Shown: in pieces, positions 6,726 to 29,869 of the stretch
Numbering within the stretch: position 1 is the stretch's first letter
Layout: every line of letters starts with the position of its first letter
Assembly: GCF_016432865.1 (NCBI RefSeq)
Contig: NC_067400.1
Span: 612,746,001 to 612,810,000, forward strand
Source: Antechinus flavipes
Lineage: Eukaryota
Length of the DNA stretch: 64,000 nucleotides
Reading direction: 5' to 3'
Translations under genes and position numbers: made by a program
The notes under the pieces: generated by a model
What the model saw: only the letters and a program-made list of their open reading frames with translations
Told to the model about the DNA's origin: nothing
Databases searched by the model: none

Positions 6726-7299
6726 GTTTTTTAATTTATATTTTGTTCAGATTTATTTAGACTAAAGGGGCTAAATTGAGGTTTCCTATTCATACTTTTT
6801 ACTACTTCTTTCTATAATTCATTAATCTTTTCCTTTAAGTACTTAGACATTATGCCATTTGGTGAATATATGTTTAATATTGATAATAACACATTATTTA
6901 CAGTACTATTCAGCACAATGTCATATCCCTGTTTATTTTCTTTAGCTTCTTTTTTTGCTGTTTTGTCTGAGAACATATTAACACCTCTGCCCCTTATTTT
7001 AACTGTAGCTTTCTTGTTTCAAGTGTCTTTATTTTATCCTCTTACAGTCTATGTGTCGGTTTTTACCATTCCCGTACAGAATTATGACTGTTCATTTTGT
7101 ATTTTCTTCCATCTTATTGTCTTCTGCTTTTTTTGTTTGTTTGTTTGTTTGTTTGTTTGTTTCCCATTCCCTCATAAAGAAGAGGACGCTAGGGGACAAG
7201 GAGTGAACTCTGTACTTGTACTCACATTTCTGTTACCTTGTCCCATTTCTCTTTATTTCGCTGGAATAACTAACCATTTTGGAAAATTGGAACGATGCC

Positions 7300-18340: not shown

Positions 18341-19454
18341 GATGCCCTTCTACAGTATTACTTTGACTCAGGACTCCCCCTCCCCCAATTCTCTGTGTTC
18401 TCTATCTCTCTCGGTATCAGTCTTTCTCTCTCTCTCGGTGTCTCTGTCTCTGTCTGTATCTTTGCCTCTCTCATTTCCCTCCTCCAAGATGGTCTCAGAA
18501 TCCCCAATCTCCAAACAGCAGCTAGGCAGAGGAGGGAGAAGGGATTAAAGACTGTGGAAGCTGGGAATGGCAAAGGATTTTTAAGGATATTTCATAAGAA
18601 CCCTATAAAACCATTTATTATTATTAGAATCCAAATGAATCCTCTCTTCCTCAAACCTGGATGCAGCCATTGGAGGAGGGGAGTTTTGGACCCTTGGAGC
18701 CCAAACTAGAACCCAAGCTTTCTGGAAAGACTGGAGATGAGGAATAAAGGAAGCATCAGGGGAAGTGGGGGGAACTTTTAGCAGATGGCCTGTTCTCCCT
18801 CCATGTCTGGGTGGTCCTGCCTCAAACCCCCTTGCATAGAGCTACAGTCAGTGTCAGGGGCTGAAGAAAACCTCAGGCCCGCTTTCTGGCCTCCTGCCTT
18901 TGGCCCACCTTTTCCAGGACGCTGCCGCCCCACACCCCCCGAGATTCTCCAGAACCAGTGTGGCGGCAAGGGGATGGTGTTGGGATTTCTAAATCTTCTG
19001 TCCCCCTTTCTCCCATTTCCCACTGAGTGCCATTAGTCTCCACCTCTCCCAAGCCCGGACCGAGAAGTCTGCCCTAGCGGGATCCTGGGGCCACGACCAA
19101 TAAATAAATACTGAGTAGAATAAAAATCATTCACATATGAATCCGGAGAGATGAGGAAGGGGAACTGTTGTAAATATTCTTTTTACACAAGTCAGAGCGG
19201 GAGGTGAGGTCCTTGACTCCCCCCAATCCAGAACTCCTGAGTTGATCGGGAAGAGGCGCCCCGAAGTGGGCTATCAGGGCAGCTCCCTTTCTCCAGGTGA
19301 CTTTTCCTGCCTGCTGCAGGCCTCGGTTTCCTCCTCCCTTGAGTGTGCCGGGAGGAAGAGGGGAAATGTCTGCACAAACAGCAGCAGCGGAATAAATATG
19401 TTAATGTCTCTGTCTACGAGGAATCTTGAGTGTGAAGTCCATGGAAAGGTTGAG

Positions 19455-22400
19455 TCAGACCTAGAACAAAATGAGAAGCCTGGAGCGGTCGTGGAGGAGA
19501 CCCCGGCTTGTGTCCTCCCCCTCCTGAACCACCCATTTTCCAAAGGAGGAGAAAAAGAGCTTCAGCCTTTTCCCCTTCTTCCCCCGCCCCAGACAAGTAA
19601 AAGGGGGAAACCAGAGGCTGAGGGCAGCTAGGAGAGAATCGGAGGGTGGAGTCTCGAAGGGAGGGAAATGGGAGGACACTGACCTCTCTGCCACAGAGGG
19701 AGCAGTCTGGGATGACGTAAATGGGTCGGGGATCTCTGTCCTCGGGAAAGCACCAATCTTCAGCCCTGACGGGGAAGAAAATGGGGTTGGAGGGAGGAGG
19801 GCCCCAGGCTCACCCCGCGACTGAGAAGGCGCCCTCAGAAATTGTGGGATAACTCCCTGGAAGCTCGAAGGGGCCCTTCAAGCCCCGGATCCACTTCCTC
19901 CTAACCCCGCAAGCCTTTTCTTTCCCCTAATCCTCTAACCCGATGCCCAGCTGTTCCCCGGCCCAGCAAAGAAACCCGACGGGAGAACTAAGCGATGGGC
20001 CCCGCCCCACCCGTCCGAGAGAATGGGCGGAAGGGGAGAAGACTTAGTCACCTCATCCCCGACGGGTACTCCAGCAGTCGCTGCGTCCGCTCGCACTTGG
20101 GCGCTTTCAAGTTGCCGGGACCCTGAAAAAGGGGCGCCGAGGAGCCGCCGTCGTGAGCCCGGAGATTGTTGAGTGCGTCCGCTGGAGGCGGGGGTGGCGG
20201 GACGGGGTCCGGGGAGGAAGGAAGGGGCCGCGCCCCCGGACTCCGCCGCCGGGCCCGGGCTCTGACCAGGAGGGCGGCGCCTCCCGCCACGATAGCCAGC
20301 AGTAGCACCAGAGCGAAGGGAAGCCCCAAGGCGGGGGGCAGGGGCACGTGCCTGCGTCGGGCCGCCTCTGGGGGCCCGTGGTGGGGTCCGGGCGGGGGCG
20401 GGGCGGGAGCAGGCGGGAGCTCCGAGCCCTCTCCGTCCGCCGGTCCGGGATTCACGGGGAACTCACAGCGCGCGCCCATGTAGCCCGGCGCACAGGAGCA
20501 GACGTGGCCGGAGAAGTGCGCGTAGCAGCGGCCACCGTGCGCGCAAGGCTGGGGATCGCAGGGGTCTGCGCGCTCCCGACAGTCGCGGCCCCCAAAGCCC
20601 AGCGTGCACGAGCAGCGGAAGCTGTGCGCGCCGTCCACGCACGTGCCCCCGTTGGCGCAGGGCCGTCCGGCGCAGTCGTCCAGGTCGCGCTCACAGCGCG
20701 GGCCCCCGTAGCCGGGCCTGCACCGGCACAGCACGGCCCGGCCCAGGTCCAGGCAAACGCCACCTGCCAGGGAAAAAGCCCCGCGCGTCACGGCCCCTGC
20801 TCGGCCCGGCGGAGCCTCCTCAGCCCGGCCGTCCCTTAGGGCGCCACGCTGGAGAAGCCCAGATCTCACACCGGGAGACTGGGATCCGAGTGGGAGAGAC
20901 CTCCGAGGGCGCGCGGTCCCTTCTCCTCAGCATGATTTTCTCTTCCAGATCCCGTCCCTCTCTGCCCTCCTTTCCCGCCTCCAGCTACGCCCCCTCGATC
21001 CCCCGTCGCTGCTCACGGCTTGGTCTTCCCCAACCCTGCTCTCCCTCTCCCTCCTCTTGGCTCCCCAATAAAGGAAAGAGCGAAGGACTCTGGTTTCTAG
21101 GTCCTTCTGCCGCTGCCCCTGGCCTCCTGGTCCCTTTGCCCCAGACCTCCCGCCCACGGCGCAATGGGAAGATTTGAAGGGCCTGGATTCGAGTCCAAAC
21201 CACCCCTGACCTTCGGAAACTGACTCAACTCAAGCTCTCGGGGCCTGTTTTTTCCCTCTGACTTCTCATGGGACCAAATCGTTTCCAGTTTTAAGCCTAT
21301 CTATCACCCAGGTATCTTTGGGCCTCAGTTTCCACTTTATTAGACGAGAGTAATGGGCTGCACCATCTTGAAGACTCACCGTTGCGACAAGGCTGGAGGC
21401 TGCAGCGATCCATCTTCTTCTCACAGTTGGACCCATGGAAGCCTGGTGGGCAGCGGCAGGTGTAACCAGCAGGGGTTCCGCCATCCACACAGGTGCCCCC
21501 ATTGAAGCAGGGCCCATCAGCGCACGTCATCCCGATGACCTCACATCGTTTCCCATAGAAGCCCCGTGGACATGTACATTCGAAGTCCCCGGCCACCTCC
21601 TGGAAGCGGAAGGGGTGGGGGTGAAATCTTGGCCCTGCTACCTATTATTATCTTCCCTCTTCTGAGTCTCAGTTTCCTCATCTGTAAAATGAGGGGACTG
21701 AATAGATCCCTAATTGATCCCTTGTCCATTGCCCACCCAAGGGCATCTCCCTGTTTCCCTCCCGTCCTCCTTCATTCATCTTCCACATTTCTACCAGAAA
21801 AATCTTCCTAAAGCACAGCTCTGGTACTGAATGGCTCTTCTCTGCTCAGAAAACTTCAGGGACTTCCTCTTGCCTCTAGGATAACTCCTCAACCTGGCAC
21901 TTCCCTCTCTTCCTAAGCTGAGATGCTGCTCCTTGAGGCATCTTTCTAAATATTTCCTTTTATGGAGTTTCCTTCTAGATGCTGCCCTTCATGGTATCTT
22001 TCTAGATACTTAAGAAATTCGGGACTCAAAACCAACTGAACTTGTGACTTTTCCCTAAACTCGAAGTCGCATCCCACCTCCACCTGGGAATTCGCTTCCG
22101 ATTCTCACCTCTCCAGGTCTGTCTTGTCTTCTGTCAAGTCTCAGCTGAGGTATTGCCAGCTGCTTTAAATCCTCCCCAGCCCACTTCCCACTCCCCTTCC
22201 TTGCTAGTGCTTCCCTCCTGCTCCACCTCTCTCCAGGTGACTTATTCCTATACCTTTTCCCTCCCGTGTAAACCCCTCAAGGGACTTTAATTTTTGTCTT
22301 TGTCTTCCCAGAGCATAGCACAGTGACCTGCATCCTGTGGGTGCTCACAGTGACTTGGATCCTGTGGGTGCTGAATTAAACTGAGTCTAAGCACCATTCC

Positions 22401-28430: not shown

Positions 28431-29869
28431 AATCTCCCTCCACTCCCAGGATGCTCTCTAGTACAAAGCACAATCATGCCAAATAGATGTTAATCACCCC
28501 TGTGCCTTATGCCCAGTGTGAGCTGGTCTCTGGTCCTGGTATTGGGAGACCAATATGAAAATTACTAACAAACATATTCCGAAATCACTCCCAAAAGTGT
28601 ATGTAGCCCCGCTGGGCCCCCAGAAGGAACACTTGTTCTGTACGCTGTTCCTTGTTCTGTACGCTGTTCCTTGAACCCAGGTTAACCAAATTGCTGTTCT
28701 GATAAAACTGCTGTTAGCAGAGCCCGTGGCTAGGCTACTGGCCAAAAAAAGATTTGTTTTCAGTCACCTTAGTATCCCTGACATAGCTGAGAGCCAAAAT
28801 GTTGGTATAAAAGCTTTCTTCCCCCTGACTCTAAAAGCCAATTAGCTACCCATGCTATCTGGCCCGGCGCTTTTGCCAAAATAAGGCTCTGACTTAAACA
28901 GAATCCTGTGCCAGCATTCTCACTCCGACTCCGAACCAAACCGCTCAGTCCTGCCGCAGCAGGACTGATCATGCTTATAGATTTAAAGTCAGGAGGACCC
29001 TGGGCCAACCAGCATGTGCCAGGCACTGTGTTTCTGGGCACCAGGCACATAACCACGGTCACTGCTGCAGGAGCTCCTCGTCTGTAGGCCATCCAGTCCT
29101 GTGCCCTCATTCCACGGGCGAGGATGTGAGTGCTGAGTCTGCCACCCCGCAGCCGGGACTGGGACCTGACTCCAGACCTCGTTCCCCCGTGGCACCTCCC
29201 TGCCTCTTGCTGCTGAATAATCTAGAACCAGCTCCTGCAGGACTGATGTGTTCAGGACCAAGGTTCTCAATACGAGTTTGGGGCCAGAATCGGTCGACCT
29301 GCCCTCAATGGGAGTCAGAGGATGGCAGAGTCCTCTCCAGCATCACACTGCACTAGCAGGGAAAAGGGCCGACCCTAGTGGGGGTCTCACCTTCACACTG
29401 ACGTGGGGGAGGGGCCAGATCATTTTAAGGGTGAGAAAATAGATTCAGGGAAAGTCAGGGAGTATCATAGCCAGCATTTAACTGAACTGAAGGATTTTCA
29501 TTCAAAATATTCCCTATCCTCTTCCCCCAGCCAGGCTGTTCCCAGGAGAAAGAGACAAAGAGAAGCTCAATGTCCTTTAACAACTGAAATGATCTTCCTC
29601 CTCACAGCTAGTTCGATGGAGAGAATGCTGGGAGTCAGAAAACCTGAGTTCAAATTGAGCTTCCAAAACTTAAATGTTTGACTCCAGATGACTCTTTGCC
29701 TTGGTCTCAACTGTGAAATGGGAATAACAACATCTACCTTGCAGGTTGTAAGCTTAGCATTGTGCTTGGCACATAGTAGGCCCTTTATAAATTATTATTC
29801 CCTTTCTGCTCATACCTCAGATATTTCAGTCCAGGTCCTCACCACCTTTTGCCTGGATGAGATACTTTT

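What the first reader, a model, noticed from the sequence alone, without database searches (positions are those of the whole stretch)
19455..20250. DLL3 intracellular domain keeps lysines and a terminal valine
Seen: the ICD contains DALNNLR...[10 protein letters not shown] (Lys codons at 20105-20107 and 20096-20098) and ends ...[14 protein letters not shown], with V* alone in the last exon. Established: placental DLL3 ICD lacks lysines; Mindbomb ubiquitylation of ICD lysines is needed for ligand activity; DLL1 ends in ATEV. Inference: an intermediate ligand that may be ubiquitylated, while REV lacks the -2 S/T of a class I PDZ motif.
Basis: partly seen in the sequence, partly recalled or inferred. 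Interest (0 to 1): 0.72.

Follow-up and report, generated by a model that had tools for sequence, protein, structure and literature searches.

The report
Marsupial DLL3 tail keeps two lysines
The Notch-ligand gene DLL3 of the yellow-footed antechinus encodes a cytoplasmic tail with two lysines and a final valine, which nearly all marsupials share and placentals lack. These look like leftovers of a tail that is shedding lysines, not proof of a working signalling ligand.

Summary
On the minus strand the last three coding exons of DLL3 give a 99-residue intracellular domain (ICD). It has Lys codons at 20107-20105 and 20098-20096 and ends ...CGRE|V*, with GTC TGA alone in the last exon. The window is 100% identical to the Antechinus flavipes assembly, and the public NCBI model XP_051846827.1 has this same tail, so the gene is already annotated.

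- **Lysines:** both are kept in 11 of 12 marsupial species across five orders. Only the Tasmanian devil lost them (K>Q, K>R), on a branch with 32 AT>GC against 2 GC>AT changes.
- **Origin:** they sit in a conserved block inherited from the lysine-rich, ATEV-ending tails of amphibian and reptile DLL3/DeltaC. Placentals lack that block.
- **Weak case for function:**
  - The lysine columns are no better conserved than the average ICD column.
  - The ICD lysine share, K/(K+R) 0.13, equals that of the ectodomain (0.12).
  - The Mib1 N-box is absent.
  - The devil manages without the lysines.
- **C-terminus:** That change predates the marsupial-placental split.

No RNA reads could be obtained. I read this as an evolutionary intermediate; ubiquitylation is untested.

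The parts
20264..20329 (-). Transmembrane segment of DLL3 ([22 protein letters not shown]), within exon 7
   Evidence: Translation; hydropathy scan; aligned with the TM of other DLL3/DeltaC proteins.
20052..20263 (-). Intracellular domain, part 1 (3' end of exon 7). It runs from RARARRR to ...EYPSGM plus two bases of a split Arg codon.
   Evidence: 100% identical to NCBI model P0140; donor GT at 20051-20050 conserved in four marsupials.
20162..20170 (-). NNL tripeptide (AAC AAT CTC) within ADALNNLRA. This is the di-asparagine motif shared by DLL1, DLL3 and DeltaC tails.
   Evidence: invariant in 12 marsupials; NNL in Dll3 and DlC described in PMC3241720.
20069..20110 (-). Conserved block [14 protein letters not shown] holding both lysines (AAA 20107-20105, AAG 20098-20096). 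It corresponds to the tetrapod DLL3/DeltaC block FK(V/I/M)xN(K/Q)...K(R/Q)KLL(D/E). In placental models the first lysine's position holds another residue and the stretch from the second lysine onward is missing.
19766..20051 (-). Intron 7 (GT...AG)
   Evidence: Reading through gives a stop right after ...SGMR.
19684..19765 (-). Exon 8: last base of the split Arg codon plus [27 protein letters not shown]
   Evidence: tblastn with four marsupial DLL3 models; conserved splice sites.
19461..19683 (-). Intron 8 (GT...AG). It stays open in frame if retained, but it is not conserved as coding sequence.
   Evidence: read-through translation; indels between dasyurids. Only the old opossum model P0050 reads through.
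19455..19460 (-). Coding part of the last exon: GTC TGA (Val, stop)
   Evidence: TAG|GTCTGA conserved in Antechinus, Sminthopsis, Sarcophilus and Dromiciops. Models of eight marsupial species end in REV: seven at their C-terminus and Gracilinanus before its SELENOV fusion.

Best explanation
This is the already annotated DLL3 orthologue of Antechinus flavipes. Its intracellular tail is a partly eroded DeltaC-type tail. The ancestral tetrapod tail was lysine-rich (7-15 K), carried an NNL motif and an FKVxNK...KRKLL block, and ended in the PDZ ligand ATEV. In the therian stem the -2 Thr became Arg (AREV/GREV) and most lysines were replaced, largely by arginine, as the whole gene became very GC-rich. 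Marsupials kept one ancestral block with two lysines. In placentals the first lysine was replaced, the stretch holding the second is missing, and most changed the final Val to Ala. The two lysines and the valine are therefore retained ancestral residues. The block they sit in is under moderate purifying selection, but the lysines themselves show no extra constraint, and the devil lineage lost both through AT>GC substitutions. Shown here: the sequence, the gene model, the conservation pattern, the composition and the substitution bias. Inferred: that the lysines have no lysine-specific selected role such as Mib1 ubiquitin acceptance.
For: - Identity and gene model.
- Lysine counts and C-termini by clade. 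Fish, amphibians and squamates have 7-17 K and ATEV. Marsupials have 2 K and REV. Placentals have 0 K and mostly AREA. Birds have 0 K and ATQV/ATRV.
- Both K are kept in 11 of 12 marsupials and lost only in Sarcophilus, as AAA>CAA and AAG>AGG.
- The devil tip has 32 W>S against 2 S>W changes in exons 7 and 8, and 19:1 in the ICD. GC is 80% there against 73% in Antechinus.
- ICD dN/dS is 0.28-0.43 against 0.01-0.04 for the EGF repeats.
- The K columns take 1 parsimony step each, against an ICD mean of 1.31; 65 of 99 columns have 1 step or fewer.
- K/(K+R) in marsupial ICDs (0.13-0.20) equals the ectodomain value (0.12-0.19; Fisher OR 0.99, p=1). Amphibian ICDs are enriched (OR 3.1, p=7e-6).
- Placental and bird ectodomains hold only 1-4 K, so a K-free ICD is the expected outcome there.
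- The N-box (L/I/V)KN(T/I)N is absent from the marsupial and tetrapod DLL3/DeltaC tails checked, but present in a Dll4 control.
Against: - Both lysines have survived since the marsupial crown ancestor in five orders, inside one of the four best-conserved ICD blocks. That is compatible with a function.
- The ancestral ICD-specific lysine enrichment was lost, so the ICD lost more lysines than composition alone predicts. This could reflect selection for a low-ubiquitin tail that stopped short of zero.
- The devil replacements could be slightly deleterious changes fixed by biased gene conversion.
- Mib1 is reported to interact with Dll3 despite the missing N-box (PMC3241720).
- There are no expression or biochemical data for any marsupial DLL3.
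Confidence: 0.6

Rival explanations
1. The two lysines are working ubiquitin acceptors. Marsupial DLL3, which also keeps an intact DSL domain, would then still be a Mib1-regulated ligand able to be endocytosed and to activate Notch in trans. The change to a pure cis-inhibitor would be a placental event.
For: - Two K are conserved in 11 of 12 marsupials over five orders.
- The NNL motif is invariant.
- The ICD is under purifying selection (dN/dS 0.28-0.43).
- There are Pfam DSL hits on the Antechinus and other marsupial models, and a canonical-looking DSL sequence appears.
- Mib1 acts solely through ICD lysines (PMC11887331), and in mouse Dll1 a single lysine is the main site.
Against: - The devil lost both lysines while its EGF repeats remain tightly constrained.
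- The lysine columns are no more conserved than average.
- The N-box, the main Mib1 docking site and the location of Dll1 K613, is absent (PMC3634445).
- The lysine share equals the ectodomain background.
- The PDZ ligand is already broken.
Confidence: 0.17
2. The block [14 protein letters not shown] is conserved as a binding or sorting motif, for example a leucine-based trafficking signal or a partner docking site inherited from DeltaC. The lysines would matter as part of that motif's charge pattern, not as ubiquitin acceptors.
For: - The block is one of four conserved ICD islands in marsupials.
- It lines up with FKVxNK...K(R/Q)KLL(D/E) of amphibians and squamates.
- The devil keeps ER-T-x-RLL(D) and swaps the second K for R, a charge-conserving change.
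Against: - Placentals do without the block.
- The acidic residue is one position off the canonical [DE]xxxL[LI] spacing (read).
- No partner is known.
- The first K became Q in the devil, which is not charge-conserving.
Confidence: 0.18
3. The lysine segment or the V* ending is an annotation artefact. Real transcripts would use other splice sites that skip the lysines or end the protein elsewhere.
For: - No RNA reads could be examined.
- Four of twelve NCBI marsupial models end differently: Macrotis, plus Trichosurus, Dromiciops and Gracilinanus fused to SELENOV.
- An in-frame cryptic GT lies inside the second lysine codon (exon end 20097).
Against: - No in-frame GT upstream of both lysines exists in the ICD part of exon 7.
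- All twelve species' models, including isoforms, contain the lysine segment.
- The real donor, both acceptors and GTC TGA are conserved across dasyurids and Dromiciops.
- Intron 8 carries indels that rule out coding.
Confidence: 0.04

Closest known systems
Placental DLL3 (mouse Dll3 and other placental DLL3 models)
   Same: It is the orthologue. It has the same MNNL-DSL-EGF-TM layout and the same ADALNNLR motif. The (D/E)W..PED..(I/V)Y(V/I) island and the ...ARE + one-residue ending are shared, and the -2 position is already Arg. The selenoprotein gene lies downstream on the same strand (earlier finding s1-208916).
   Different: Placental ICDs have 0 lysines in the 73-75 residue form. The first lysine's position holds another residue and the stretch from the second lysine onward is missing. 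Most end in Ala rather than Val. Placental models also show no Pfam DSL hit, whereas the marsupial ones do.
Non-mammalian DLL3/DeltaC (amphibian, squamate and fish 'delta-like protein 3' or 'delta-like protein C')
   Same: They share the NN(L/F) motif, the hydrophobic-Lys start of the block (FKV.. against LKAP..), the ..LL(D/E) end of the block, the PIY(V/I)(I/L)P island and the terminal Val.
   Different: Those tails carry 7-17 lysines, with K/(K+R) of 0.44-0.74, and end in the class I PDZ ligand ATEV. Antechinus has 2 lysines, K/(K+R) of 0.13, and ends in REV.
DLL1 / DLL4 (canonical Mib1-dependent activating ligands)
   Same: Single-pass DSL ligand with an NNL motif and a C-terminal Val (PMC3241720, PMC1807952).
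   Different: DLL1 and DLL4 have the (L/I/V)KN(T/I)N N-box, which holds the main ubiquitylated lysine of mouse Dll1 (K613), and an intact ATEV PDZ ligand. Both are missing here (Dll4 control positive; PMC3634445; PMC11887331).
Bird DLL3
   Same: The tail is strongly lysine-depleted and the whole protein is lysine-poor.
   Different: Birds shortened the tail to 32-40 residues with 0 K, yet kept Thr at -2 and Val at 0 (ATQV/ATRV). This is the reverse combination to marsupials.

Membership tests
DLL3 orthologue group | Best sequence match to annotated DLL3 proteins | tested here: met
   Exons 5 to 8 are 100% identical to 'delta-like protein 3 [Antechinus flavipes]' XP_051846827.1. The window DNA is 7101/7101 nt identical to that assembly.
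DLL3 orthologue group | MNNL - DSL - EGF repeats - TM architecture | tested here: met
   Precomputed Pfam hits MNNL, DSL and EGF on the product at locus L002; exon map by tblastn; TM.
DLL3 orthologue group | Conserved neighbourhood (selenoprotein V-type gene directly downstream) | tested here: met
   The SELENOV-like C-terminal part of the fused Dromiciops model maps to window 16371-16114 and 15797-15696, on the same strand just downstream. This agrees with earlier finding s1-208916. Placental synteny is from general knowledge and was not tested.
Placental-type (divergent, non-activating) DLL3 | Intracellular domain devoid of lysines | tested here: not met
   There are two Lys codons at 20107-20105 and 20098-20096. 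Placental models have 0.
Placental-type (divergent, non-activating) DLL3 | No C-terminal class I PDZ ligand | tested here: met
   The protein ends G-R-E-V, with Arg at -2.
Placental-type (divergent, non-activating) DLL3 | Degenerate DSL domain | tested here: not met
   There is an unmarked Pfam PF01414 DSL hit on the Antechinus product, and the sequence [38 protein letters not shown] appears. Placental DLL3 entries list no PF01414. This was examined in more depth by earlier finding s1-208920.
Mib1-dependent DSL ligand tail | Acceptor lysines in the ICD | tested here: met
   Two lysines. Whether they are modified was not testable.
Mib1-dependent DSL ligand tail | N-box (L/I/V)KN(T/I)N that docks the MZM domain | tested here: not met
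   A regex scan finds none in the marsupial or other tetrapod DLL3/DeltaC tails checked. The Dll4 control has LKNTN. PMC3241720 says the same for Dll3 and DlC.
Mib1-dependent DSL ligand tail | Di-asparagine (NNL) motif | tested here: met
   ALNNLR at 20170-20162, invariant in 12 marsupials.
Mib1-dependent DSL ligand tail | C-box bound by the REP domain; actual Mib1 binding and ubiquitylation | not testable with these tools
   The C-box is too loosely defined for a pattern test, and this question needs biochemistry.
Class I PDZ ligand (S/T-x-hydrophobic-COOH) | Ser/Thr at -2 | tested here: not met
   Arg at -2 in all marsupial and placental models. Thr is found in non-mammalian orthologues and in birds.
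Class I PDZ ligand (S/T-x-hydrophobic-COOH) | Hydrophobic residue at position 0 | tested here: met
   Val, encoded by GTC at 19460-19458.

The most novel reading that the evidence does not exclude
Marsupial DLL3 combines an intact DSL domain with a tail that still offers two conserved lysines next to an NNL motif. On this reading it is still an endocytosed, Mib1-regulated ligand that can activate Notch in trans. The conversion of DLL3 into a lysine-free, purely cis-inhibitory protein would then be a placental innovation, perhaps produced by loss of the 3' end of exon 7, and the devil would be a second, independent loss.
Probability: 0.12. Interest if true: 0.65.

Novelty: new variant of a known kind. 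Interest (0 to 1): 0.35.

Why it matters
DLL3 is the odd Notch ligand. In mouse it cannot activate Notch, acts in cis, and its lysine-free tail is often given as one reason. Marsupials offer a natural intermediate: two lysines, an ancestral tail block and a terminal valine, on top of an intact DSL domain. The Tasmanian devil offers a natural K-less control within the same family.

The compositional result may matter more than the lysines themselves. In placentals and birds the whole protein is almost lysine-free. A lysine-free tail may therefore be a by-product of GC-driven lysine loss across the gene and not a selected property. That bears on how the mouse data are interpreted.

Tried and rejected
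- **First word search:** searching with the terminal exon found only fragments and non-marsupial proteins because of the length window. A second search with the platypus fragment still missed marsupials, whose models exceed 682 aa. The third, using the old opossum model P0050, found them.
- **Genomic DNA:** for Macrotis, Notamacropus, Petaurus, Vombatus, Monodelphis, Trichosurus and Gracilinanus it could not be fetched (files too large; P0131 not on record). DNA-level tests therefore rest on four species.
- **Spliced model:** the joined spliced protein was never built or searched. Exons were handled apart, by reference.
- **Intron-8 retention isoform:** rejected as coding. Its start, VSVLPFPSL, resembles the read-through opossum model, but the dasyurid alignment has frame-breaking indels.
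- **Acidic dileucine motif at RLLE:** rejected as canonical because the spacing is off by one.
- **Literature:** searches for marsupial DLL3 found nothing relevant.
- **Not used:** the large representative protein search and structure prediction. Neither would inform a disordered tail.

Full report
**What is there.** Reading the minus strand of 19300-20500 and translating the pieces gives the 3' end of a Delta-like gene. Exon 7 (20764-20052) encodes EGF repeats, a proline-rich linker, a transmembrane segment (20329-20264) and the first 70 residues of the tail: [70 protein letters not shown]. It then runs into a GAG|GTGACT donor. Exon 8 (19765-19684) completes an Arg codon and adds [27 protein letters not shown]. 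After a GT...AG intron, the last exon contributes only GTC TGA (19460-19455). The Lys codons are AAA at 20107-20105 and AAG at 20098-20096.

**Whose gene it is.** Word searches and a cluster look-up returned annotated DLL3 proteins from twelve marsupial species. The Antechinus flavipes model XP_051846827.1 (P0140) is 100% identical to the window over exons 5-8 and ends CGREV. Its genomic locus (L002, GCA_016432865.2) is identical to the window at 7101 of 7101 bases. So the window is yellow-footed antechinus, and the gene and this tail are already in the public annotation. I found no paper in the held library that discusses marsupial DLL3.

**Gene model.**
- tblastn with four marsupial models places the exons.
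- A DNA alignment of Antechinus, Sminthopsis, Sarcophilus and Dromiciops shows three conserved features: the exon-7 donor (GGGATGAG|GTGA), the exon-8 acceptor and the TAG|GTCTGA mini-exon. The exon-8 donor is conserved in the three dasyurids.
- In Dromiciops that donor reads GC. This probably explains why its NCBI model skips on into the downstream selenoprotein gene.
- Intron 8 has indels that rule it out as coding sequence.
- Inside the ICD part of exon 7, no in-frame GT lies upstream of both lysines. The only upstream in-frame GT sits inside the second lysine codon.
- All twelve species' models, isoforms included, contain the lysine segment.

**The premises.**
[quoted passage not shown] 2008).
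- Mib1 activates Delta solely by ubiquitylating ICD lysines, and mouse Dll1 has one major site, K613, in the Mib-interaction motif (PMC11887331, PMC3634445).
- ATEV is the PDZ-binding end of Dll1 (PMC1807952).
- Eight placental DLL3 models checked here have 0 K in a 73-75 residue tail. Seven end in xxEA (six AREA, one APEA), and one bat model ends AREV.

**Comparative pattern.**

| Clade | ICD length | Lysines | C-terminus |
|---|---|---|---|
| Fish, amphibian, squamate DLL3/DeltaC | 105-135 | 7-17 | ATEV |
| Birds | 32-40 | 0 | ATQV or ATRV |
| Marsupials | 89-100 | 2 (devil: 0) | (A/G/V)REV |
| Placentals | 73-75 | 0 | AREA (mostly) |

- The platypus model is too uncertain at its 3' end to use.
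- The alignment shows four conserved islands in marsupial tails: ADALNNLRA, (L/F)KA(P/S)[10 protein letters not shown], RAEDWCLPED.DP..IYVIPD, and REV.
- The first, third and fourth islands are shared with placentals.
- The second island carries both lysines. It lines up with FK(V/I/M)xN(K/Q)...K(R/Q)KLL(D/E) of amphibians and squamates.
- In placentals the first lysine's position holds another residue, and the stretch from the second lysine onward is missing.
- The first lysine aligns with the ancestral FK lysine.
- The Thr>Arg change at -2 is shared by marsupials and placentals, so the PDZ ligand was broken before they split. The valine is simply retained.

**Are the lysines conserved?** Yes, in 11 of 12 species spanning Didelphimorphia, Microbiotheria, Diprotodontia, Peramelemorphia and Dasyuromorphia. 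The one exception is the Tasmanian devil, a relative of Antechinus. It reads SFQAPRSERTPRLLD, with AAA>CAA and AAG>AGG.

**Is that more than background?**
- By Fitch parsimony on the species tree, each lysine column takes 1 step. The 99 ICD columns average 1.31 steps, and 65 of them take one step or none.
- Nei-Gojobori dN/dS is 0.28-0.43 for the ICD and 0.01-0.04 for the EGF part of the same exon.
- The tail is therefore moderately constrained, and the lysines are typical members of it, not outliers.

**Composition.**
- Exons 7 and 8 are 71-80% G+C.
- In marsupials, lysine makes up 0.12-0.19 of basic residues in the ectodomain and 0.13-0.20 in the tail (pooled odds ratio 0.99, p=1).
- In amphibians the tail is enriched about three-fold over the ectodomain (OR 3.1, p=7e-6).
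- Placental and bird ectodomains hold only 1-4 lysines in about 440 residues. With 6-11 basic residues in the tail, zero lysines is the most likely count there.
- On the devil tip, changes polarised by the other three species are 32 AT>GC against 2 GC>AT (ICD 19:1). Both lysine losses are of that kind.
- This is the signature of GC-biased substitution. The devil's EGF repeats stay under strong constraint (dN/dS 0.02), so the gene is alive without tail lysines.

**Mib1 docking.** The (L/I/V)KN(T/I)N N-box is absent from the marsupial and other tetrapod DLL3/DeltaC tails I scanned, but present in a Dll4 control. This agrees with PMC3241720. The NNL motif is invariant. The same paper states that Mib1 interaction has been documented for Dll3, so docking cannot be excluded.

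**Reading.**
- *Most likely (about 0.6):* the lysines and the valine are ancestral residues surviving in a tail that lost its ICD-specific lysine enrichment and its PDZ ligand in the therian stem, under relaxed need and GC pressure. Placentals finished the process by losing the block, and the devil did so by point substitutions.
- *About 0.17:* the lysines are working Mib1 acceptors and marsupial DLL3 is still an activating ligand.
- *About 0.18:* the block is a binding or sorting motif in which lysine is incidental.
- *About 0.04:* the pattern is an annotation artefact.

**Limits.** DNA-level tests rest on four species because other genomes could not be fetched. Human and primate-looking hits (P0019, P0003, P0004, P0092) were set aside.

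Noticed in passing
L001:10700-11557 (Sarcophilus DLL3 exons 7-8) against window 20764-19684: The devil branch shows 32 AT>GC against 2 GC>AT private substitutions in these exons, and the exons are 80% G+C. It also has a 33-nt deletion in the juxtamembrane linker. This looks like strong GC-biased substitution in the region.
   Followed up: partly
window 20095-20098; placental fragments P0002, P0005-P0007, P0010, P0023: An in-frame cryptic GT lies inside the second lysine codon (CCC AA|GTGCGA, exon end 20097). Placental exon 7 appears to end at about the homologous place: read-through fragments end ...GP-R-stop, as from CCN AG|GTGA. The placental loss of the stretch could be a donor shift at this codon or an internal deletion. 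No placental DNA was available to decide.
   Followed up: no
L004:9060-9070 (Dromiciops), and models P0132, P0142, P0145, P0136: The NCBI DLL3 models of Dromiciops, Trichosurus and Gracilinanus run on into the downstream SELENOV-type gene, and Macrotis has another foreign tail. In Dromiciops the exon-8 donor is GC rather than GT, while the TAG|GTCTGA last exon is intact.
   Followed up: partly
whole DLL3 protein (P0140 and orthologues): Lysine depletion affects the entire protein, not just the tail. Ectodomain K/(K+R) is about 0.3-0.6 in most fish (one 0.2), amphibians and squamates, 0.12-0.19 in marsupials and 0.02-0.10 in placentals and birds.
   Followed up: yes
bird DLL3 models P0114, P0120, P0123, P0015: Birds independently reduced the tail to 32-40 residues with no lysine and no NNL, yet kept Thr at -2 and Val at 0 (ATQV/ATRV). 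This is the opposite combination to marsupials.
   Followed up: no
window 19414-19683 (minus strand): Intron 8 stays open in frame for about 90 codons if retained (VSVLPFPSL...). An old opossum model (P0050) reads through in the same way (VSVPPLPSF...). It is not conserved in frame among dasyurids.
   Followed up: partly
window 28979-29110 (minus strand): The first 44 residues of the devil DLL3 model (P0134, 792 aa) match an ORF about 3 kb upstream of the Antechinus DLL3 start. That model lacks the GVFEL start of the MNNL domain, so its N-terminus is probably mis-annotated.
   Followed up: no
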